A program made the translations under genes and the position numbers. The notes beneath the pieces are model-generated. The model worked only from the letters and a program-made list of their open reading frames with translations. It had not been told where the DNA came from and did no database searches. A DNA stretch of 63,815 bases, filler included, from Octopus bimaculoides (lineage: Eukaryota), in assembly GCF_001194135.2 (NCBI RefSeq). It is 6 parts of 6 records of this genome, joined end to end, with 100 filler letters (N's around TTAATTAATTAA, not from the genome) between each part and the next. Parts side by side here need not be neighbours in the genome. Positions count along the whole stretch, not along the records: positions 32,244 to 43,954 come from NC_068982.1; 5 more parts are not named here. The stretch is one strand, 5' to 3'. Shown in pieces: positions 32,244 to 43,954 of the stretch (the stretch's first letter is position 1; each line of letters starts with the position of its first letter).

Positions 32244-32574
32244 TGAGATGCACCATTTTGAGCGTGGCCGTTGCCAGTACCGCCTGACTGGCTCCTGTAG
32301 GATTTTCGAGCGAGATCGTTGCCAGTGCCCCTGGACTGGCTTGTGCGGGTGGCACATAAAAGACACCATTTCGAGCGTGGCCGTTTTCGTGCGGGTGACA
32401 CGTAAAAGCACCCACTACACTCTCTGAGTGGTTGGCGTTAGGAAGGGCATCCAGCTGTAGAAACTCTGCCAAATCAGACTGGAGCCTGGTGTTGCCATCC
32501 GGTTTCACCAGTCCTCAGTCAAATCGTCCAACCCATGCTAGCATGGAAAGCGGACGTTAAACGATGATGATGAT
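32244..32574 (+). mobile_element. SINE family C (RTE-type 3' tail, (GAT)n end)
   Basis: gtggttggcgttaggaagggcatccagctgtagaaac...ccaacccatgctagcatggaaagcggacgttaaacgatgatgat. Homologous to the 3' end of the RTE LINE at about 39520-39680. Confidence 0.88.
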
Positions 32575-32699
32575 ATATATATATAAGGTACAGCTATTTT
32601 GGGGACCATCTTCCTTGTTTTTGCTGTTTAGATGTTCTCATTAATTTAGGTTTATTCTGAACTTTTTCTCATTATGTTGTCCAATTCTTCGTCTTCTAG

Positions 32700-32865
32700 A
32701 TGACTACGGAATACTGTCGACAAATGCTACGGGTTGTTGTGGCCCAAATCTGCCAACATCTAGGATGGCATTCTACCAATTCCACTCCACTTGAAGTTCT
32801 TACTGATGTGACAGAGCGATATATTCTTGATGTTAGTAAACTAACTCACCAGTATGCTGAACAGT
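32700..32865 (+). CDS. TAF3: TAF3 coding exon 1 (histone-fold / bromodomain-associated domain, N-terminal part)
   Basis: MTTEYCRQMLRVVVAQICQHLGW...LEVLTDVTERYI resembles the TAF3 N-terminus (vertebrate MCESYSRSLLRVSVAQICQALGW). The ATG directly follows the acceptor ttcttcgtcttctag. Donor gtaagt, phase 1. Confidence 0.9.
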
Positions 32866-33244
32866 GTAAGTTTTTATTTTTTGTTGTTTGTTTTGTTATT
32901 CTGGAGGAATATTTTTTGAATATTTGTTGAGTTGATGGTGATTAAATATCAAATGTATGAAACTAGAACAAAATGAAGCATGTTTTTTTCAAGTTATGAT
33001 CTGATCTCCATTTATACAATATACACTCATTAACATGTAAACAGAACACATGTGACAGATTATTCGGATCAAGAAAACTCTGCAAGTGTTCATAGGTTTT
33101 TAAAGAAGATTGTCTAAAATTCATATATGACATACATTTATAATATGAGTAAATAAGGGAGCTTCTATTTAGTTGCTTCACATGCTAGAAACCACAGCCA
33201 AATCTCCCTCACCTCATATCTTCCAGTCTTAAAATGAGAAAGGA

Positions 33245-33545
33245 ACATAATTTGATGTCCGTTGTCCATGCTGGCATGGGTTGAACATTTTGACTGGGCT
33301 GGCACGCTGGAAGGCTGCACCAGGATACAGTCTGATTTGGCGTGATTTTCTATGGCTGGATGCCCTTCCTAACACCAACCACTCCAAGAGTGTAATGGGT
33401 GCTTTTACGTGCCACTGGCACAGCACCAGTATCTATCTGGACTGTGATTTTGCTCAGCTTGATGGGTCTTCTTCTCAAGCACGACATAATGCCAGAGGTC
33501 TTGGTCATTGCCTCCGTGCGGCCCAACACTCGAAAGACGTACAAT
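33245..33545 (-). mobile_element. SINE family C, older copy in a TAF3 intron
   Basis: Reverse complement of the family C tail (gtccgttgtccatgctggcatgggttgaac...ggatgcccttcctaacaccaaccactcc). Confidence 0.8.
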
Positions 33546-35045
33546 AATGTAGTCTTAGACATATATGCTTTAAACAAAGATGAGATGATCAGGGCTTGAA
33601 TACTTTTATTCATTGGTCTGCTTAACAGAAGCTGGGGGATAAAGAACCAACATTTATAATAAGATGTGATATACATTTATTGCAGATTTTCTCTGTAATA
33701 GTTTTTGATTGAATTATTGCCTATAATAATTGGTTAGAAACTATCTCTGGAATATGTTCAAATGTTTCTGAACATGATGTGGATGTATATTAAGTTTGTT
33801 CATAAGGTGAAAGGAGAGCAAGATATCTTTATTTTTAAGAGTGCTGCATGAAATTTTATTCAAGAACTGCTGGAGTTGAAAGGGGGGGGCATGAATTAAG
33901 TGAGCCTAAAGAATATAACAAAGATTGAAGTATTAAATATTGTTAGTAACCCAAACCTGAACTCAATAGCATAGAAATGGCCACAATTAATATTTTCAAA
34001 AGTAATATATTGGAATTCAATGTTAGACTGGTGAAATCCCATTATAATAAACATCAATACAAAGATGAGAAAGAAAAAGGGAGGGAGAGAAAGAGAGACA
34101 AAAAATTTAGGGAGAGTTGATGATGTTTTATTAAAGGTAGCAGTGGGAATAATAATAAGAGAGAGAACGAGTGGGTATGTCAGAGAGAAAGGGACTGAAT
34201 ACTGAACGAACATACTGAACACTGATGATAATGGGGTGATAGTAATAGTATGAGCTGTGGTTGTGATAGAGGCAGAGGTGGTGGTGGTGGTAGCCGAGGC
34301 ATTCAGGGATGACAGTGAGAGTAAGTGATGTGAAAGACAGTGGTAATGGTGGTGTACAAAGTGGTAATGGTACTGTACAAAGTTTATTTATATTTACAGT
34401 GATGCAGCAATTTTTATTATTTAAATCTTGTAATCCTTTACAAAACTTAATGTTTACATTATTTTACAACCCGGTGACAAGTAATCACTGATGTTAGTGT
34501 GTGTTCATTAAAAAGATTTGTCCCATCCTGCTATGATGATATTTAAGTTGATGACATTGTTAGTGAGTCTGATGATAATGAAGCTGAGGCAAACAATGAT
34601 GAGTCTGACGTGTTGACAAGGCTGAGGTTGAAAACGTCAAATATGAGGGGAAAAAATCCTGTATATATGCAGACATGACTGTTTGCTTCCTGGCAACATG
34701 GTTTCAGGTTCAATCCCACTGCATGGCATCTTGAGTAATTCTTTTCTATTATAACCCTGAACCAACCAAAGCCTTGTGAATGAATGTGCTAGATAGAAAG
34801 TGAAAGAAGCTCATCAAATGTGTGTATGTATATATATACTACATAAGTAATATTTTTATAAACAAGTTACAGAGTTCGGTCAGTTGTTTATATTTAAAAA
34901 TTGTCACTTCAAATCGGAGAATAAATATCATTATGATATATGTAATATACAGTTATATATATAACAATCAATAATATGTATGAAGAAAATCATATCTTTA
35001 TTTTAAATCACACCTTAAGAATCTAACAATTGTTTCAATTGCATT

Positions 35046-35090
<45 letters not shown>

Positions 35091-36129
35091 CATCATCATC
35101 ATTGTTTAATGTCCACCTTCCATGCTAGCATTATGTATATTCATATGTACATATATAAATATACACATAATATTATTATGTCAATACATTATCAAGGTAA
35201 TCCAAATTGGTGAAATTCTAACTGAAGATCTGAAAAAATTTTAGTTGTTAAAAATCGCTAACAAAAAAACACCAAATTTAACTTTAGATATTCATTAGTT
35301 ATAGATATTCATTACGTAGAATTATTTTCTGTAGTTTTTTTTCTTTAGTTATCTATTAAGCATAACGTAGAATTCTTGTCTGCAATTTTTGTTCTTTAGA
35401 TATCCAGTGACATCATCAATTTTAATGGATAAATATACCCATTTTCTATGTTAGGATTTTTTTTATGTAGATTTCAAATTGTCAAAAAAATATGGAATTA
35501 GTATGATATTTTTTATATCTTATTTTTATAAACTAAATTAGCTATTCAATGACATTGTTCTTAGTTGAATGAATGAATGTCTAAAGTTAAATTTGGTTTG
35601 TTGGTTTTTAACAGCTAAAATTTTTTCTGATGTTCAGTTAGAATTTAACCAATTTGGGTTACCTTGATGATGTTGTGTTGACATAAATTTTCATACATAT
35701 TACTATTAACTTTGATAATATTATGTATGTATATGTGTGTGTGTGTGTGAATATATATATGTATGTATATGTTAATGCAATTGAAACAATTGTTGGATTC
35801 TTAAGGTGTGATCTAAAATAAAGATATGATTTTCTTTGTACATGTTATTCATAGTTGTTAATACTCTGAATTTTTTTAAATTCTGCATAAGAATTGTTGA
35901 ATTTATCTGTCATACATGAGGATTTACATGAGATTTGTATTGTACATACATTTATCGGTATCTTCTTGGAAATTTAACCTTATTCTTTTATACTGAGTGC
36001 TTAGTTTATATCTGCCAGGATTTTTTTAACCCCTTTTTTTCTTTTATATAGATATGTTTGTGTGTGTGTGTGTGTGTGTACATATATGTATGTATATGTG
36101 TGTGTTTGTATCTCTTTGTCTTGAAATAG

Positions 36130-36320
36130 CTTTATGGTTGTAAAGGAGCACCACTGTCATAGAAGCAGTGTTGTTCACGTCCAGTCTTCTGGTGATGGCA
36201 AAATATTACCTTGCTTGGAAACAGGTGAAGGTTGGCAACAGGAAGGGGATCCAGCCATAGAAAATCTTCTTCAGTGAATTCTTTTTGACCTATGCTGGCA
36301 TGAAAAGCAATGATAATAAC
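36130..36320 (+). mobile_element. SINE family C-related tail in a TAF3 intron
   Basis: ggttggcaacaggaaggggatccagccatagaaaatc...ctatgctggcatgaaaagcaatgataataac. Confidence 0.65.
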
Positions 36321-36434
36321 AAAGATATTTTTGTGTGTGTATGTGTGTGTGTGTGTGTGTGTGCATGTGCGCACGTGCGTGTGGGCATGTGTGTTAAGAA
36401 CTGATTGATGGATTTCTAAATATTACTATTTCAG

Positions 36435-36677
36435 ATGGACGCACAAAAGTGAATTTGAATGATTTAGGTTTGGCCTTCCGTACAATGGACATTAGTATAA
36501 GTGAATTAGAAGACTACATCAAACATGTTGATGCTTTTCCATTTGAGAAAGAATTAGTGGTGTTTCCAAAGCCCAAAAAAACCAAGTTAGGATTTCCTAA
36601 CCCAAAGAGCCGTGAAATTTACCATCGAGAAGAACATATTCCTCATTACTTGCCTTATATGTTTCCTGGTATGGAAG
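36435..36677 (+). CDS. TAF3: TAF3 coding exon 2
   Basis: YGRTKVNLNDLGLAFRTMDISISELEDYIKHV...EEHIPHYLPYMFP completes the histone fold and the HIPxYLP motif. ag/gt boundaries, phase 1 to phase 1. Confidence 0.9.
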
Positions 36678-37441
36678 GTAAGAGACTTTTTATAAAGTTG
36701 TTTGCTATTCTCTTATTTAGATTCTTTTTAAATATCTCTTTTACAAGTTTTACATTCAGTTTTACATACAAGCATTTTTGGAATGATTTAAAATTTGAAT
36801 TATTGAAAATTGTTAAGGCATGTGTTTCTTTATAAGTTGATGCCTTTTCTGCTGTTGTCCATTCAAGATTTGAACCCAAAACCTTATAATTGTGGGCCCA
36901 ATACTCTAACCACTAGACCTCATGTTTTTATAACTGGACAGATTTTTACATAAAGCTGCTTGTGCAAATGAAAGTGATGTGTATGTTTTGGAATCAAGGT
37001 TTCCTTCTTCCTTTGATATACACCTCTTGTAGCAGCAGGAATTTTATCCTTTCACAATTTTAAATTGCAAAGAAAACTATGGACCTGTTTAGAATTGAAG
37101 GGAATTTCTGCTATATGCTGTTTGTAGTAGTTGGATTGGTAGTGCAGAACACAATGGCATTAGAGTCTTGCTTTCATCATCATCAACTTTAAAAACATGT
37201 AGAAGCACCATCATATAAGACAGTTGGATTGTAACCATTCTATAGACATGTCCAACCAATGCCAGCCTACCATGATGGTGCTTCTACATGTTTTTATATT
37301 TCTAATGATGTTTAGTTTTAAAATAGTTTTAAAAAGATATTTGTTCTTCATGTATTATAAATGCATCTACAACAGTAAATAAACAATCCAATTTAATGTA
37401 ATACTTCTTGTTTTTGATACAATAGCATTTCTATCTTTCAG

Positions 37442-37646
37442 ATGAAGTTGAGGCTGAAGAGGAAGTATCTCCTCCTCCATCAGAAACTCCAGCAGCTCAG
37501 GCTGGAAACACAACTCCAGTATCGCTTCCCAACTCTCAAGAAGCAAAAACTAGTGAAAGCCTTTCTGAGACAAGTCCAAACTTAAGACCTGGTGAGAAAA
37601 GGCTCCTTAACAGTCCAACAGATGGACAGGTGTATAAAAGACAAAG
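37442..37646 (+). CDS. TAF3: TAF3 coding exon 3 (acidic, Ser/Pro-rich)
   Basis: Acceptor atctttcag, donor gtaagg. Open frame DEVEAEEEVSPPP...GQVYKRQR, phase 1 to phase 2, bridging exons 2 and 4. Confidence 0.85.
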
Positions 37647-37889
37647 GTAAGGAAAAGTTACAAATATTTCTTTCACTAAAATGTTTAGGGCATTTTAAAT
37701 TCTAAACTCAATTGAATAAGCATTTTTGGTATTGTTTACTGAAATTTATGTTAGTTTTCATAAAAACGACTATTATTTCCACCTACATTCATCCAAGAAT
37801 ATCTATGTATCAAGTTTGTTTTTAAATGGCCACTTTGTGTCAGCTGCACATGTAGCAAAAGTAATTTAGTAGTGTAACATACTCAAAAT

Positions 37890-39680
37890 CTCCAATGGGA
37901 GAAGGAGAATCTGCCTACTGTGGATCCAACAGAGGAACCAGCAATTTGAATAAGCAGTAGCATGGTAGATAAAGCCATGAAGGATAGGAAAACCAGGAAA
38001 GCCCCTGGCCTATCAGGAATCACTGTTGAGATGCTTAAAATATCTGGCAGTGTGAGTTATGGTCTAATCACCCGTATAGTTAATCAAGTTATTCACAAGG
38101 GAGTCATACCCCATGACTGGTGAAGCAGCTACAAAGGTATGCCTTAGACAAAAATAATTACAGAGGTATCAAATTATTAGATCAGGCAGTGAAAGTTATG
38201 GAGAGGGTCATAGCCCAACTAATTAGGAAGAGAACTTAGTCTAGATGAGATGCAATTTGGTTTTGTGCCAAGGAGAAGCACCACTGATGCTATATTTCTA
38301 GTAAGGAAGTTGCAGGAGAAGTACCGAGCCAAAAATAAACCCCTGTACTTGGCTTTTGTTGACATGGAGAAAACCTTCAACAAGGTCTCCTGCTCCCTTA
38401 TCTGGTGGTCAATGTGGAAAGTAGGGATAGATGAGAGCTGTACAAGCCATGTACAGGAATGCTATCAATAAGGTGAAGGTTGGCAATGAATTCAGAATAC
38501 AGATAGGGGTTCACCAAGGGTCAGTCCTTAGCTCCCTCTTGTCCATCATAGTCCTCTAGGCAATAACAAAGGAATTTAAGTCAGGCTGCTCTTGGGAGCT
38601 CCTCTATGCTGAATCACTACCAGAACTAGAGAAGAAATTTCAGGTGTGGAAGCAAAGTCTAGAAGTTAATTTAGCAAAAACCAAAACCTTTAGTGAGTGG
38701 GAAAGCAGACAAATCACAAATTCCTTCTCAATATGCAGAAAAGGCATAGGCAGAAATTCTATAAGATGTACCCAATACAAGCTATGGACACATAAGAAGT
38801 GCAGCAATATCAGAGGAAGGTTAACAAGGAAAATAACAGATGCACAGGTACAATTAACACTGGAAATATACAGAAAATAAACTCCATCAAATACCAGGTG
38901 GGTTACCTAGAAGTAGTTGATAGCTTCTGTCGTCTAGGTGACCAAGTCAGCTGTTGAGATCAATGTTCCGAGACTGTAGCTGCTAGAATAAGAATAGGCT
39001 GGGTAAAGTTCAGAGAGCTCCTACCTCTGTTGGTAACTAAGAGCCTTTCCTTCAGAGTAGAAGGAAGATTGTATGATGCCTATATGTGAACAGCCATGCT
39101 ACATGGCTGTGACTGCTGAGAACATGTGTGGAAATAAAGCAAGCATGATTCGTTGGATGTGCAATTTCAGTGTGCATCTATGACAGAATGTAAGCATCTT
39201 GAGAGAAAAACTGGACATAAGAGGCATCAGATGTGATGTGCAAGAGACAACTGTGCTGGTTTGGTCATGTGATACATATGAACGAGGACAGCTGTATAGA
39301 GAAGTGCTGGCCTTTAACTGTGGAGGGAACCTGTAGAAAAAGTAGACCCAGGTAAACATGGGACAAGGTGGTGAAACATGATCTTTGAACATTGAGCCTC
39401 ACAGAGGCAATGACAAGTGACCAAAACCTTTGGCAACATGCTGTGCTTAAGAAGACTTGTCAAGCCAAGTGAAATTGTAATTGTGGCCAATACCAGTGTC
39501 ATGTAACAGGCATGTGAAAGACACCCCTTACATTCTTGGAGTGGTTGGCATTAGGAAGGGCATCTAGCCATAGAAACCATACCAGATTAGACTGGATTTT
39601 GGTGCAGCTCTCTGGCTTACCTGTTCCAGTCAAACCATCTAACCCATGCCTGCATGGAAAACAGATACCAAATGATAATG
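37890..39680 (+). mobile_element. RTE-clade LINE, 5'-truncated, in a TAF3 intron
   Basis: KAPGLSGITVEMLK, QFGFVPRRSTTDAIFLVRKLQEKYRAKNKPLYLAFVDMEK, GVHQGSVLSSLL, RIGWVKFRELLPLL. Ends in the family C tail. Confidence 0.9.
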
Positions 39681-39812
39681 TGTGTGTGTGTGTGTGTGAT
39701 AGAGGAATAGTGTTATAAAGTTGTATAAATATTTTGTGTTGAGTAAAGATTCTGAATGCATTTACTTACCAGTGGAGTTGAGAATATATTTGAAATTATT
39801 TTTTCTTTATAG

Positions 39813-41577
39813 GTTGACCAATAATAATTTGCCTGAAGAAGCTGGACATTCGCAGTATGAAATGACTGGTGTGAAGATGTTGCCTTCTGGTTTATTGTCT
39901 CCTATGAAGAACGAAGGAAAGCTTCCTGATGCTTCTCTTCCACAGATCTTTACACCTGTTGAGAAAAAGAAGGAACCTGTTGTTAAAGAAATTCCAAAGA
40001 AAATTGTGGCCGGAGTGACAGGTGATGGTTCAAAATTAGAAGATAAAGAAAACATTACAGTGAAAAAGACCAACAGTAATCAAAAGGATCCTGGAAAAGT
40101 CAATCCTACAAAAACACCTGCGAAATCTATCAGTAAAAATAGTTCTAATCTTCCTCCGAATAAAACAGTGAAAAAAAATTCAATTGCTAAAGGAAAAATC
40201 ACTAAAATAACAAAGAAATCAGCTAATAGAACTGTGGTAGCAGCCAAATCATTAAAAGGAAAAGTAATGAATAAAAACTCTGTGAAGAATGTATCTAATA
40301 AAAGCTCAGCAAAGAATGTTTCTAATAAAAACTCATCTAAAACTGATGGTGCACCACCTGGAAGTCCAGGAAGTTGCTTGAAAGAGCTTTTGCTTCATCC
40401 AAAAGCAGAAAAGAGTAAAACAACAAAAGTTGATAAGAAGCTTCCTTATTCTTCATCCCCTTCTATTAAGGCTGGTGGTACTCCTGTTAAAGTACCAAGT
40501 AATTTATTAATGCCTGCCAATGCAATGGCAATGTCTAAGAACTTGCATTCGCTTCCAGAAGATGATAGTTCAACAGATGAATCACCAGAGCCACGTCTTA
40601 TTATTGCCGAGTCAGATCCAAAACCCAAAGAGAAAGGTGACTCAAAGTGGGGAAAATCTGCCAAGTACGATAGTATTCAAGGTGGTGGTAAGAAAGGAGA
40701 GCAATCAGCTCAGGACAAAAGTAAAGCTGGTACAACAAGCACTGGGCCTAAAGAAAAGAAAACTGCAGCACAAAAGAAAAAGAAGGAACCAGTCAAGAGA
40801 AGTACATCAGAAAGTATTGATGCTTGCATCAACACAGTGGTGCGCAACTATAGTGCTGCAGCCACCCGAGAGAGAAAACAAAGGGAGCTTGATGCAATAC
40901 CCAAAACAGATGCAGATGCATTGGTTGCTGCTGCGACTGCTGCCGTTGTGTCTGCAGCTGCAGCAGCCACAGCATCTTCAGCGGCTCTTAACTCAACTGC
41001 TGTTTCTAAACCTTGCGTTAAATCTGAAAACCTAGAAGTAGTTAAGAAAGGAGACAAAAAGCCACAAAAGAAGAAGAAAAATGTGACAAAGGAAAAAGTA
41101 AAGAAATTGAAAGCAAAAACTGTTGATGAACTAAATGACAAAGAAAATGCTGAAGTGCCTGATAAACTCAAGGAGAAACTGCAACAAAATGTACAACACC
41201 AGAACTCACCTGGTCCTGACAGGACTCCACTCGCTTGTCCTGATAGATATGCTTCAGAAGCCTGGAAAATCTATGATTTTGATGGCAGTCCACCTGTGTC
41301 ACGTTGCTGTTCATCACCAACTCAAGGTACCTCTTCCCTTAGTGTATCACCTTCTCCTAAGCAGATGTCACCTACAGTTATGGATTCACTCACTTTGCTT
41401 TCAACAGCTGCAACAAGTGCAGCAAATGCAGCCATGGGAATGCTTCCTTCAACTCCATTTATGCCTACAGATTCGAGTAATATGTCAATGCAAGATACTG
41501 ACCTTTCACAGCTTAAAATGAAAATTGGGCTCAAGAAAGGTGGCAAAGGGAAAATAAAATCGAAGCTGAAATCAAAG
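39813..41577 (+). CDS. TAF3: TAF3 coding exon 4 (long Lys/Ser-rich disordered region)
   Basis: Part of ORF 39721-41601. Acceptor ttttctttatag at 39812, donor gtaagt at 41578. EMTGVKMLPSGLLSPMKNEGKLPD resembles the invertebrate TAF3 SGFLSPAREGKLP motif. Confidence 0.85.
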
Positions 41578-43129
41578 GTAAGTCAGATTAGAAGAGAATA
41601 AATAAAATTAAAAAGCCAAAAAAGATTATTCTAATTCAGGAAAGAGAAAATTAATTCTTTCACAAATCACTAAACTGAGACTTAACTCTGTTTTCTATGT
41701 AATTTTAAGAAAATATGAGACAAATCTTTCCCTGGATAAGATGCCAGTCTATTGCAGTTAACTTTTTCACAAGATAAGTAAAACTCAGCATTCCAAGCTA
41801 ACAAAGCACTGGTTAATTTTGCAATGCTACTGGTAATTACAGTGCAATGTCATTCTGCTCTAGTTCTCTTATGTTTATCAGCTGTGTGTGGTCATAAGTC
41901 TCTTCACTATTAGCACAACACATTGCTAGTGACAATACAAACGACTGGTTGTTTAGTGTGCCATGGATCTCATAATTCTTGTGGCTAATTTTTACAAGAT
42001 TTTTATTGAAGAATTATTTTATAAATTTGAACACTTTATTCCTCTGTTTGTCTACGATTTCCCTTCTTTCTCTGTTTAACCTAACACTAAATCTACTAGT
42101 ATAGAAGGGAGGTCAATTTCATTAAATGATTAATGAATGGTATGCCCAAGGGAATCTGCATTTAGAGATATTACTGTATATAAATTCCACTTTTCAAATT
42201 AAATATCGTACTGTAATAAGAATAATAACAACTAGTGGAACCTGTGAATATTTCACGGAATTAATGGTTAACTTATTGGGTTATTTCTGGAAACTATTCA
42301 AAAATCTGAAAGTGTAGCCTGTGTTGTGTCTGTATCAAAAGATAGCTGCTCACCTGCTAATCATTGAAAAGTGAGAGAAATTGGAATATGATTGCTTAAT
42401 GCACTTTATATATACACTTTATATATTTTATGCACAATTTTATAGACTTAATACACAGCACTCCCCCTCTTCCTCTCACTCTTTGCCATACCCTCTTTTT
42501 CTCTCTCCTTTTTTTTTTTGCTTTTCGCCTTTCCCGTCAACTAATCACATGAAAGCATTACAGATGGCAAAGTAACAGAGGGGAAAAACATAGTTCAAAA
42601 ATAAAAATTACACATTTCACTCATCACTACCTCCCCCTCCCCTTCAACTAACCATGTGGAAATGTTATGAATGGGCTACATAACGGAGGAGCAAGCAGAA
42701 TTATTATAAGATATATATTGCTTTGTTGAGTAGGTTATGGAAGTACCCTTGTAGGCTTGAGATTTACTACTTGTTGGTGAGCTCCAAGACAGATCTGATC
42801 CAGGAGTTTTATGATCAAGAACATTTCAATATGATAATCTCATCTATTTTATTTTCAGGCACAGTGCATCTAGGTCCACATTATCCAATGTATCCTTCCA
42901 CTTTTAAGATTTTAGGAGGATTTGACTGTTGTTTTAGCAGGTTGAGTAATCACATAGAGACTCCTTCAATTTATCCAACCAATATCTTTATGAAACCATT
43001 GAATATTAGCTAACATGTTTTACATCCATTTTTTTCTGTTATTAAGTGTAGGGTTGTTGTGGTTTTTGATATTTGAAAATATATTTCTCTAAACTAAATT
43101 AAAGATTTTACTCAACTGTGAATTGGAAG

Positions 43130-43440
43130 TGGTTCTGAATTTTAGCTTGAGTTATGCTGAGTCTATGCTATGGGGAGGTACATTCTTTACTAAGGAGGGT
43201 CTTTGTATCTAAGAGCAACCATGCATTCTGCTGTCTGGTAAGAATGAAATCGATCTGGGTAGCAGAGTTGATTGATAAGTTATCAGGTGGCTGGCTGGCT
43301 TCTTGAAGTTGGTGTTGCAGATCAGAAGGTTATTTGTATCACGGCTTCTTGAAGTTGGTGTTGCAGATCAGAAGGTTATTTCACTAATTTCAGAGTAATC
43401 ATTCTGCCAATATCCAAAGTGCTATACTCTTTCTACCAGT
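43130..43440 (-). mobile_element. RTE LINE APE-endonuclease fragment with an internal tandem duplication
   Basis: Minus-strand NNLLICNTNFKKPASHLITYQS / TQIDFILTRQ. The ggcttcttgaagttggtgttgcagatcagaaggttattt segment occurs twice in tandem at about 43298-43382. Confidence 0.7.
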
Positions 43441-43549
43441 AACCTTGTAGTCTGTTGAGTATTCTTGCCTGTACTTTTTGTGTTACTGAAGTCATCAGCC
43501 TACCTCTGATGGTAATTTGTCACCTCTAACTTTAGTGGTTATTTTCTAG

Positions 43550-43672
43550 ATAAAAGAACACAAGAAGGAAAAGAAAGATAAAAAGAAAGACAAGGAGAAA
43601 AAGAAGAAAACAAAAGAAAGAGAAGAGAAAAAGCAAAAGGATAAAGAACGAATCAAAGAGGATAATTATCAG
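43550..43672 (+). CDS. TAF3: TAF3 coding exon 5 (KEKK-rich); no later exons, including the PHD finger, were found in the window
   Basis: Acceptor attttctag, donor gtaagt. IKEHKKEKKDKKKDKEKKKK...EDNYQ, phase 0 to phase 0, matching the KEK-rich tract typical of TAF3. Confidence 0.85.
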
Positions 43673-43714
43673 GTAAGTGATGTAATTTTATTCAGTTTTA
43701 TTAAATGACTTCAT

Positions 43715-43954
43715 TCATCATCATCATCATCATCGTTTAACGTCCGCTTTCCATGCTAGCATGGGTTGGACGATTTGACTGAGGACTGGTGAAACCGGAT
43801 GGCAACACCAGGCTCCAGTCTGATTTGGCAGAGTTTCTACAGCTGGATGCCCTTCCTAACGCCAACCACTCAGAGAGTGTAGTGGGTGCTTTTACGTGTC
43901 ACCCGCACGAAAACGGCCACGCTCGAAATGGTGTCTTTTATGTGCCACCCGCAC
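43715..43954 (-). mobile_element. SINE family C, inverted relative to the copy at 32244-32574
   Basis: 43723-43954 is the exact reverse complement of 32343-32574 (232 bp, by manual comparison). Confidence 0.9.

What the first reader, a model, noticed from the sequence alone, without database searches (positions are those of the whole stretch)
32343..43954. Candidate TAF3 circular RNA with an endless (rolling-circle) ORF, bracketed by a perfect inverted SINE pair
Seen: TAF3 exons 32700-32865, 36435-36677, 37442-37646, 39813-41577 and 43550-43672 total 166+243+205+1765+123 = 2502 nt = 834 codons with no stop. The first exon begins exactly at the ATG behind a splice acceptor and the last ends in phase 0. 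SINE-C copies at 32343-32574 and 43723-43954 are exact reverse complements over 232 bp, ending 125 nt before the acceptor and starting about 50 nt after the donor. Established: inverted repeats in flanking introns promote back-splicing and form ADAR substrates, and coleoid cephalopods edit RNA extensively. Inference: back-splicing 43672 to 32700 would give a circle with its own AUG and no stop, encoding concatenated histone-fold TAF3 fragments without the H3K4me3-reading PHD finger. Caveats: both SINEs run into scaffold joins, so the 100% identity may be a collapsed consensus, although their tail-side junctions are anchored in unique sequence. Any phase-0-to-phase-0 exon block gives an open circle.
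Basis: partly seen in the sequence, partly recalled or inferred. Interest (0 to 1): 0.75.

Follow-up and report, generated by a model that had tools for sequence, protein, structure and literature searches.

The report
Octopod TAF3 exons between inverted SINEs
This is an ordinary stretch of an octopus-type TAF3 gene whose first five coding exons lie between two oppositely oriented copies of a very common SINE; a circular RNA with an endless reading frame could form on paper, but nothing here shows that it does, and the features that suggested it are commonplace.

Summary
The sequence observations are correct. Five AG/GT-bounded exons sum to 2502 nt, or 834 stop-free codons. They match residues 1-825 of the 1459-residue Argonauta hians TAF3-like protein in order, at 75% identity. 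A 232-nt, 100% complementary inverted SINE pair lies 125 nt before the acceptor and 50 nt after the donor.

- The open circle follows automatically from starting at the ATG and ending on a phase-0 boundary. Exons 1-4 give one too, and 4 of the gene's 15 contiguous exon blocks do.
- The introns are full of the same SINE in both orientations. The left arm has a 220-bp partner only 650 nt away, across exon 1.
- Argonauta also has inverted SINE pairs around the same block.
- Both perfect arms run off the two ends of the piece. The other copies are 77-85% identical, so the perfect identity cannot be verified and may be an assembly effect.
- Published octopus data report few, weakly expressed circRNAs (296 across 18 tissues).

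No transcript data or second assembly was reachable. Verdict: an ordinary TAF3 gene fragment with intronic SINEs, and an untested, low-prior circRNA candidate.

The parts
32244..32574 (+). Left SINE copy in sense orientation. Its 3' (ATG)4 tail lies at 32563-32574 and its 5' part is cut by the start of the piece. Positions 32343-32574 form the left arm of the perfect inverted repeat.
32575..32699 (+). Last 125 nt of the intron before the ATG exon: an (AT)n run, AT-rich sequence, a pyrimidine tract and the AG acceptor.
   Evidence: The 'yyyyAG' just before the ATG is conserved in Argonauta and Haliotis.
32700..32865 (+). TAF3 coding exon 1, 166 nt, aa 1-55. It starts at the ATG and encodes the first part of the histone fold.
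36435..36677 (+). TAF3 coding exon 2, 243 nt, aa 56-136.
37442..37646 (+). TAF3 coding exon 3, 205 nt, aa 137-204.
39813..41577 (+). TAF3 coding exon 4, 1765 nt, aa 205-793. It encodes a long Lys/Ser/Ala-rich, low-complexity region.
43550..43672 (+). TAF3 coding exon 5, 123 nt, aa 794-834. It is Lys-rich (65% A) and ends in phase 0 before the donor gtaagt.
43711..43954 (-). Right SINE copy in antisense orientation. Its (ATG)n tail, read as CAT on the + strand, faces the exon block, and its 5' part is cut by the end of the piece. Positions 43723-43954 form the right arm of the perfect inverted repeat.
33251..33421 (-). Competing SINE copy in intron 1, 81% identical to the left arm and 650 nt from it. 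Pairing of the two would bracket exon 1 alone.
   Evidence: Duplex of -320.6 kcal/mol and 220 bp.
39511..39660 (+). Competing SINE-like sequence in intron 3, at the 3' end of a decayed LINE. It is complementary to the right arm, and pairing would bracket exons 4-5.
   Evidence: Duplex of -223.1 kcal/mol and 158 bp.
35078..35131 (-). Fragment of the SINE 3' end in intron 1.
36230..36267 (+). SINE core fragment in intron 1.

Best explanation
The piece is the 5' part of an octopod TAF3 gene (TFIID subunit 3). It holds the first five coding exons, which encode the histone-fold domain and a long disordered Lys/Ser-rich region. The PHD-finger exons lie further downstream, outside the piece.

The introns are packed with copies of one abundant SINE-like retroposon in both orientations, plus a decayed LINE and microsatellites. 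The record begins and ends inside two oppositely oriented copies of that SINE.

The 'endless ORF' is arithmetic. The block starts at the start codon and ends on a phase-0 exon boundary, so it is a multiple of three and open in frame.

The normal product is linear TAF3 mRNA. In the pre-mRNA the SINE copies can form several alternative intramolecular duplexes. Their most likely fate in a coleoid is ADAR editing and removal with the introns.

A circle of exons 1-5 is one of several possible minor by-products. It is neither demonstrated nor favoured.

Shown: gene identity, exon structure, repeat anatomy and the competing pairings. Inferred: what happens to the RNA, and the cause of the perfect identity. 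That cause is probably repeat reconstruction at the contig ends, otherwise two very young insertions.
For: Gene and exon structure:
- Gene identity and colinearity.
- The same exon structure appears in Argonauta (L001) and Haliotis (L002).

The open circle is generic:
- Exons 1-4 (2379 nt) and 1-5 (2502 nt) are both open circles.
- 5 of the 15 contiguous exon blocks are multiples of three, and 4 of those are stop-free around the circle.
- In human circRNAs the ratio of ordinary to stop-free ORFs is about 3.4, so stop-free circles are common.

The SINE pair is generic:
- The piece holds at least five copies or fragments of the SINE. The 35-kb Argonauta locus gives about 60 hits.
- Argonauta has 30 inverted pairs of at least 40 nt in 13 kb. 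One of them, 8616-8680 x 16877-16941, brackets the same exon 1-5 block.
- Competing duplexes exist: left arm x the 33240-33530 copy, -320.6 kcal/mol at 650 nt; the 39490-39680 copy x right arm, -223.1 kcal/mol.

Published and structural context:
- Octopus circRNAs are few (296) and weakly expressed, which the authors attribute to ADAR.
- ADAR and DHX9 repress back-splicing at inverted SINE duplexes.
- AUG-containing circRNAs showed no evidence of translation in human data.
- Both perfect arms run off the ends of the record.
Against: - The flanking pair is by far the most stable duplex available, -500.6 kcal/mol and 238 bp. It lies unusually close to both splice sites, at 125 and 50 nt. This is the geometry that promotes back-splicing in mammalian minigene work (general knowledge).
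- The ATG exon does appear to be an internal exon with a real acceptor, so back-splicing is mechanically possible.
- No transcript data could be consulted, so absence of the circle is not shown either.
Confidence: 0.75

Rival explanations
1. A real exonic 'AUG circRNA' of 2502 nt (TAF3 coding exons 1-5) is made by back-splicing 43672 to 32700. The inverted SINE pair brings the sites together. It is a non-coding or barely translated by-product, as reported for most AUG circRNAs.
For: - Canonical acceptor and donor.
- The acceptor just before the ATG is conserved across molluscs.
- The flanking duplex is the strongest one available and lies 125 and 50 nt from the splice sites.
- AUG circRNAs are an abundant class in mammals.
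Against: - There is no RNA evidence.
- A nearer partner for the left arm is transcribed about 10 kb earlier.
- The circle would be long and would contain a 1765-nt exon.
- Octopus has few, weakly expressed circRNAs.
- Human AUG circRNAs were reported to form independently of Alu repeats.
- The perfect identity is unverified.
Confidence: 0.12
2. One reading: the circle exists and is translated round and round from its own AUG. The product is a concatemer of the TAF3 histone-fold and disordered region without the PHD finger, and it has a function such as titrating TAF10.
For: - 834 stop-free codons and a length divisible by 3.
- In the circle, the A-rich exon 5 with two AAGAAG hexamers lies directly upstream of the AUG. 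AAGAAG is one of the IRES-like hexamers reported for human circRNAs.
- Rolling-circle translation is documented for some circRNAs.
Against: - It requires the circle to exist in the first place (see the rival above).
- The A-richness is simply lysine coding.
- The AUG context CAGAUGA has C at -3 and A at +4, a weak Kozak context (general knowledge).
- Rolling-circle products are often unstable and are degraded by the proteasome.
- There was no evidence of translation for AUG circRNAs generally.
- The open frame is a by-product of exon phases.
Confidence: 0.02
3. The perfect identity of the two arms is not a property of the genome. Both contig ends were extended or polished into a high-copy SINE, so both carry the same reconstructed subfamily sequence. 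The true copies are inverted but diverged like the others.
For: - Both copies run off the two ends of the record, and the identity ends only where the data end.
- All internal copies are 77-85% identical to the arms.
- In O. vulgaris only about 4,500 SINE insertions in the whole genome are classed as recently active, against SINEs making up 11.6% of the genome. Two such copies 11 kb apart would be rare.
Against: - The tail-side junctions are distinct and anchored in unique sequence.
- The assembly method is unknown.
- Some assemblers extend into a repeat only where reads agree, in which case the identity would be real.
- Young SINE subfamilies do exist in octopus.
Confidence: 0.5
4. The inverted pair, and the other SINE pairs, act mainly as intronic double-stranded RNA. 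They are hyper-edited by ADAR, or processed into small RNAs, with no effect on which exons are joined.
For: - Long, nearly perfect duplexes are predicted.
- Most octopus A-to-I editing lies in introns and 3'UTRs, where hairpins are frequent.
- ADAR edits inverted-SINE duplexes.
Against: - There are no RNA data for this locus.
- It needs both introns to be unspliced at the same time across 11 kb.
Confidence: 0.3

Closest known systems
TAF3 (TFIID subunit 3) orthologues of molluscs, e.g. the Argonauta hians 'transcription initiation factor TFIID subunit 3-like' protein (P0001, 1459 aa)
   Same: - N-terminal Bromo_TP/histone-fold domain.
- 75% identity, colinear over aa 1-825.
- The same exon boundaries, including a 55-aa first coding exon that starts at the ATG.
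   Different: - Only the N-terminal 57% of the protein is in the piece, so the PHD-finger exons are not seen.
- The introns are about 2-3 times longer than in Argonauta.
Inverted-repeat (IRAlu-type) driven exon circularisation in mammals
   Same: Oppositely oriented SINE copies lie in the introns on both sides of a block of internal exons, close to the splice sites.
   Different: - No back-splice junction has been observed.
- The SINE family is unrelated to Alu.
- Several competing pairs lie within and across the internal introns.
- The host lineage has high ADAR activity and few circRNAs.
AUG circRNAs (Stagsted et al. 2019, PMC6487579)
   Same: The candidate circle would begin with the exon that carries the host gene's start codon, and would hold the N-terminal ORF.
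   Different: - That class was reported as Alu-independent in biogenesis and without evidence of translation.
- Membership cannot be tested without RNA data.
circRNAs with rolling-circle or infinite ORFs (rcORF/iORF; e.g. circPFAS, circABHD12, circNFIB)
   Same: Length divisible by three, an in-frame AUG and no stop around the circle (definitions).
   Different: - Known examples are mostly a few hundred nt long, whereas this one would be 2502 nt.
- The property is common, with an ordinary-to-stop-free ORF ratio of about 3.4, and follows from exon phase.
- There is no expression or translation evidence here.
Octopod SINEs (mostly 'unclassified SINE' in the O. vulgaris repeat annotation, PMC13282606)
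   Same: - Short, non-coding and very high in copy number.
- A simple-repeat 3' tail.
- Present in both Octopus-type and Argonauta introns.
   Different: - No tRNA-like head or Rfam match was found in the part that is present.
- The 5' ends are cut off, so the family cannot be named and target-site duplications cannot be checked.

Membership tests
TAF3 / TFIID subunit 3 | N-terminal histone-fold (Bromo_TP, PF07524) domain | tested here: met
   PF07524 matches aa 4-78, E 7.5e-20, 71.2 bits against a cut-off of 24.6.
TAF3 / TFIID subunit 3 | Colinear similarity to annotated TAF3 orthologues | tested here: met
   the best hit is the Argonauta hians TAF3-like protein, 75% identity over all 834 aa. 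All 52 hits are TAF3-type proteins (PF07524; all but two also PF00628).
TAF3 / TFIID subunit 3 | C-terminal PHD finger (PF00628) | not testable with these tools
   The piece ends after coding exon 5. In Argonauta the PHD is encoded by the last exons, at about aa 1389-1459.
TAF3 / TFIID subunit 3 | Conserved exon-intron structure with orthologues | tested here: met
   the first coding exon encodes 55 aa, the second 81 aa, followed by a large exon of about 585 aa, in both Argonauta and Haliotis. A short Lys-rich exon follows it in Argonauta.
Exonic circRNA (back-spliced) | Observed back-splice junction; RNase R resistance | not testable with these tools
   No transcript data for this species could be reached. 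There is no Octopus TAF3 in the protein collection, the exon-4 ORF is not on record, and TAF3 is not named in the octopus circRNA paper's held supplements.
Exonic circRNA (back-spliced) | Block bounded by a real 3' splice site upstream and a 5' splice site downstream, i.e. internal exons | tested here: met
   ttcttcgtcttctag|ATG and CAG|gtaagt. An acceptor-like context next to the ATG is conserved in Argonauta and Haliotis. The upstream 5'UTR exon itself was not seen.
Exonic circRNA (back-spliced) | Complementary sequences in the two flanking introns | tested here: met
   232 nt at 100%.: -500.6 kcal/mol. Competing pairs are also present.
Rolling-circle / infinite-ORF circRNA | Length divisible by 3, in-frame AUG, no stop around the circle | tested here: met
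   2502 nt, 0 stops in frame 0, 20 Met codons. The same holds for exons 1-4 and for exon 2 alone.
Rolling-circle / infinite-ORF circRNA | Evidence of translation (junction peptide, footprints, concatemers) | not testable with these tools
   No proteomic or Ribo-seq data are available here.
SINE | Short, non-coding, dispersed in many copies | tested here: met
   at least 5 copies or fragments in 11.7 kb and about 60 hits in the 35-kb Argonauta locus. Alignment.
SINE | 3' simple-repeat tail, possibly shared with a partner LINE | tested here: met
   (ATG)n tails. The copy at 39511-39660 directly follows a decayed RT-coding fragment. The shared tail is an inference.
SINE | Pol III-type head (tRNA, 5S or 7SL derived) | tested here: inconclusive
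   no tRNA and no Rfam hit. However, both long copies are cut at their 5' ends by the edges of the piece.
SINE | Target-site duplications | not testable with these tools
   The 5' ends of both flanking copies lie outside the piece.

The most novel reading that the evidence does not exclude
In this octopod, the two near-identical inverted SINEs drive back-splicing of TAF3 coding exons 1-5 into a 2.5-kb circle. The circle carries the gene's own AUG directly downstream of an A-rich, IRES-like exon 5. It is translated without termination into concatenated histone-fold TAF3 units that lack the PHD finger. This would be a SINE-created, lineage-specific variant of a core TFIID subunit.
Probability: 0.02. 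Interest if true: 0.6.

Novelty: already known. Interest (0 to 1): 0.15.

Why it matters
As it stands, it matters little. It is a correctly read gene fragment of a conserved general transcription factor, lying in SINE-rich introns.

If the circle were real and translated, it would be the first described coding circRNA in a cephalopod. It would also be an example of a young SINE pair creating a truncated TFIID subunit. Finally, it would be a test case for how circRNA formation coexists with the very high ADAR activity of coleoids.

The practical lesson for the scan is twofold. 'Open circle' and 'inverted SINE pair' are both expected by default in SINE-dense coding genes. Perfect repeats at the ends of a contig should not be taken at face value.

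Tried and rejected
- **Another assembly or transcript of the same or a close species.** The protein search returned no Octopus-genus TAF3, with Argonauta best at 75%. An exact look-up of four start variants of the exon-4 ORF found nothing in the collection. The metagenome scan with exon 4 gave 416 pattern matches, none confirmed. Acanthosepion TAF3 (P0002) is not on record. I therefore did not spend a second large protein search on the junction peptide, because no linear TAF3 from this lineage is in that database.
- **TAF3 among published octopus circRNAs.** The paper reports 296 circRNAs, and TAF3 is not named in the held supplements. This is uninformative, because the supplements may not use gene names.
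- **circTAF3 in the literature.** There is a single hit, in a yak mammary circRNA survey, which I did not pursue.
- **Classifying the SINE.** ARAGORN and Rfam found no tRNA or other RNA family. The weak Rfam hits (mir-297 on TG repeats, MIR2084, sX9, isrG, SCARNA7) are all far below gathering scores and I rejected them as chance.
- **A wasted literature look-up.** A 'SINE' search in the Amphioctopus paper matched 'sinensis'.
- **Whether the arms look like the family consensus.** The 8-sequence alignment shows shared core blocks and some arm-specific states. There are too few copies to separate a young subfamily from a reconstructed consensus.
- **A processed pseudogene.** Rejected, because introns are present at positions conserved with the orthologues.

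Full report
**1. What is in the sequence**

The piece 32244-43954 has 36% G+C. It contains five exon-like blocks with canonical boundaries: 32700-32865, 36435-36677, 37442-37646, 39813-41577 and 43550-43672. Each is preceded by a pyrimidine tract and AG, and each is followed by GTAAG. Joined together they give 2502 nt, or 834 codons without a stop. The other two frames hold 38 and 89 stops.

The first block starts exactly at ATG, directly after '...ttcttcgtcttctag', and a TAG stands immediately upstream in frame. The last block ends in phase 0.

**2. The gene**

The 834-aa product has a Bromo_TP/histone-fold domain at aa 4-78 (PF07524, E 7.5e-20). Its best relative is the 1459-aa 'transcription initiation factor TFIID subunit 3-like' protein of Argonauta hians. 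The two share 75% identity, are colinear from residue 1, and the match ends exactly at ...KEDNYQ, Argonauta residue 825. All 52 significant hits are TAF3-type proteins. All carry PF07524, and all but two shorter ones also carry the PHD finger PF00628.

The Argonauta locus (L001) has the same exon layout. It continues with four more coding exons that encode the remaining 634 aa, including the PHD finger. Haliotis asinina (L002) shares the same first exons.

The piece is therefore the 5' 57% of the coding region of an octopod TAF3 gene. The species is not identified, and no Octopus-genus TAF3 is in the searchable collections.

**3. Is the ATG exon an internal exon?**

This matters because a first exon cannot be back-spliced.
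- In the window the ATG is preceded by cttctag.
- In Argonauta it is preceded by atttgtag, while the rest of the upstream sequence has diverged.
- In the gastropod Haliotis, 'tacttttcag' ends one base before the ATG.

An intron ending 0-1 nt before the start codon therefore looks old in molluscs. I take the acceptor at 32699/32700 as real, with probability about 0.8. The 5'UTR exon itself was not seen.

**4. The repeats**

The repeat finder confirms arms 32343-32574 and 43723-43954: 232 nt, 100% complementary, 11148 nt apart.

The element is a dispersed, non-coding, SINE-like retroposon.
- The left copy is in sense orientation and ends in (ATG)4 followed by (AT)n.
- The right copy is antisense, with about seven ATG units facing the exon block.
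- The different tails and flanks show two separate insertions.
- The same family occurs elsewhere in the piece. Copies lie at 33251-33421 (-, 81%), 35078-35131 (-, 85%), 36230-36267 (+, 82%) and 39511-39660 (+, 77%).
- The family gives about 60 hits in the 35-kb Argonauta locus.
- No tRNA or Rfam family matches the part that is present.

**5. How special is the perfect pair?**

An inverted pair as such is not special.
- In Argonauta, 13 kb around the orthologous exons holds 30 inverted pairs of at least 40 nt.
- One of them, 8616-8680 x 16877-16941 (65 nt, 86%), brackets the same exon 1-5 block.

The perfect identity is an outlier, but it cannot be trusted.
- The right arm is cut by the end of the piece.
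- The left copy continues another 99 nt to the start of the piece.
- Both copies therefore run off the record, and the identity stops where the data stop.
- Contigs typically break in high-copy repeats. Extension or polishing there tends to give a shared reconstructed sequence (general knowledge).
- In O. vulgaris, SINEs make up 11.6% of the genome, but only about 4,500 insertions are classed as recently active. Two such copies 11 kb apart would be rare.

I put about even odds on the identity being an assembly effect. This hardly changes the biology, because copies 80-90% alike would still pair.

**6. How special is the open circle?**

It is not special. A block that starts at the start codon and ends on a phase-0 boundary must be a multiple of three and open in frame.
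- Exons 1-4 (2379 nt) qualify as well as exons 1-5.
- Of the 15 contiguous exon blocks in the piece, 5 are multiples of three and 4 are stop-free around the circle.
- Among human circRNAs, stop-free 'rcORFs' are common, with a ratio of ordinary to stop-free ORFs of about 3.4.

**7. Would the pair drive back-splicing?**

It would, in principle.
- The duplex is the strongest one available, -500.6 kcal/mol and 238 bp.
- It sits 125 and 50 nt from the splice sites.

But the left arm has another partner.
- That partner lies only 650 nt downstream, across exon 1, and pairs at -320.6 kcal/mol over 220 bp.
- It is transcribed roughly 10 kb before the right arm.

The right arm also has a partner, in intron 3, at -223.1 kcal/mol. 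Further pairs exist within intron 1 and across exons 2-3.

Competition among such pairs decides the outcome in the mammalian IRAlu systems (general knowledge: Zhang et al. 2014, Cell). ADAR and DHX9 act against back-splicing at exactly such duplexes.

The one systematic octopus study found only 296 high-confidence circRNAs in 18 tissues, at low levels. Its authors attribute this to ADAR.

**8. Would it be translated?**

Points in favour:
- Rolling-circle translation is documented for some circRNAs.
- In the circle, the A-rich exon 5 (65% A, two AAGAAG hexamers) would lie just upstream of the AUG. AAGAAG is one of the IRES-like hexamers reported.

Points against:
- That composition is simply lysine coding.
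- The AUG context is weak.
- Rolling-circle products are often degraded.
- AUG-containing circRNAs as a class showed no evidence of translation.

**9. What could not be done**

No RNA data and no second assembly of this lineage were reachable. Existence of the circle is therefore neither shown nor excluded.

**10. Verdict**

Gene, exons, repeat anatomy and mechanical feasibility are right. The functional claim is untested, rests on generic features and has a low prior.
- Best explanation: an ordinary TAF3 gene fragment in SINE-dense introns, with contig ends inside two inverted SINE copies (confidence 0.75).
- Probability that a circle of exons 1-5 is made at a detectable level: about 0.1-0.15.
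- Probability that it is translated in rolling-circle fashion with a function: about 0.02.
- Interest: 0.15.

Noticed in passing
window 37880-39700 (+): A decayed non-LTR retrotransposon lies in intron 3. RT-like translation is spread over three frames with many stops (Pfam RVT_1, E 2.5e-5, below the cut-off). It runs straight into the SINE-like 39511-39660 and a (TG)n tail. The SINE's 3' ~150 nt may therefore be the 3' end of this LINE, a shared SINE/LINE tail.
   Followed up: partly
window 34956-35863: An approximately 900-nt foldback element lies in intron 1. It has nested inverted arms (113 nt at 89%, 102 nt at 78%, 31 nt at 90%) and a predicted RNA hairpin of -348.6 kcal/mol. It may be a MITE-like element or an inverted duplication, and it is another potential ADAR substrate.
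   Followed up: partly
window 37185-37301: A hairpin in intron 2 has 30-nt arms (93% complementary) and a 57-nt loop, at -44.6 kcal/mol. Its only Rfam match is weak (MIR2084, 31 bits against a gathering score of 100), so it is probably a small repeat rather than a miRNA.
   Followed up: partly
window 43297-43381: An exact 39-nt direct duplication with 46-nt spacing lies in intron 4.
   Followed up: no
window 40270-40335: A 27-nt in-frame tandem repeat of 2.4 copies in exon 4 encodes NKNSVKNVS / NKSSAKNVS / NKNSSK. A similar Ser/Asn/Lys stretch is present in Argonauta TAF3.
   Followed up: no
window 32244-32400: The 5' part of the left SINE has an internal direct repeat. The unit CACCATTTYGAGCGTGGCCGTT occurs at 32251 and 32364, 113 nt apart, with related GCCAGTRCCCCTGRACTGGCT-like units between them. 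Such a variable-repeat head is a likely place for an assembler to break.
   Followed up: no
window 34690-34800 (+) and 36850-36930 (-): On reading the sequence, there appear to be fragments of a second, tRNA-like SINE family, with B-box-like GGTTCAATCCCAC / GGGTTCAAATCTTG. ARAGORN reports no tRNA.
   Followed up: no
L001 16527-16660 (Argonauta hians): The orthologous Lys-rich exon 5 of Argonauta is followed by GC rather than GT (TATCAG|gctagt). This suggests a GC-AG intron or a slightly different boundary in that species.
   Followed up: no
L002 2990-3003 (Haliotis asinina) and L001 9985-10003: An acceptor-like pyrimidine tract plus AG lies 0-1 nt before the TAF3 start codon in a gastropod and two cephalopods. 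This implies an ancient 5'UTR intron abutting the ATG.
   Followed up: partly
protein collection: No TAF3 protein from any Octopus species appears among the hits, although Argonauta, cuttlefish and many other molluscs do. The source species of the piece could not be named.
   Followed up: partly
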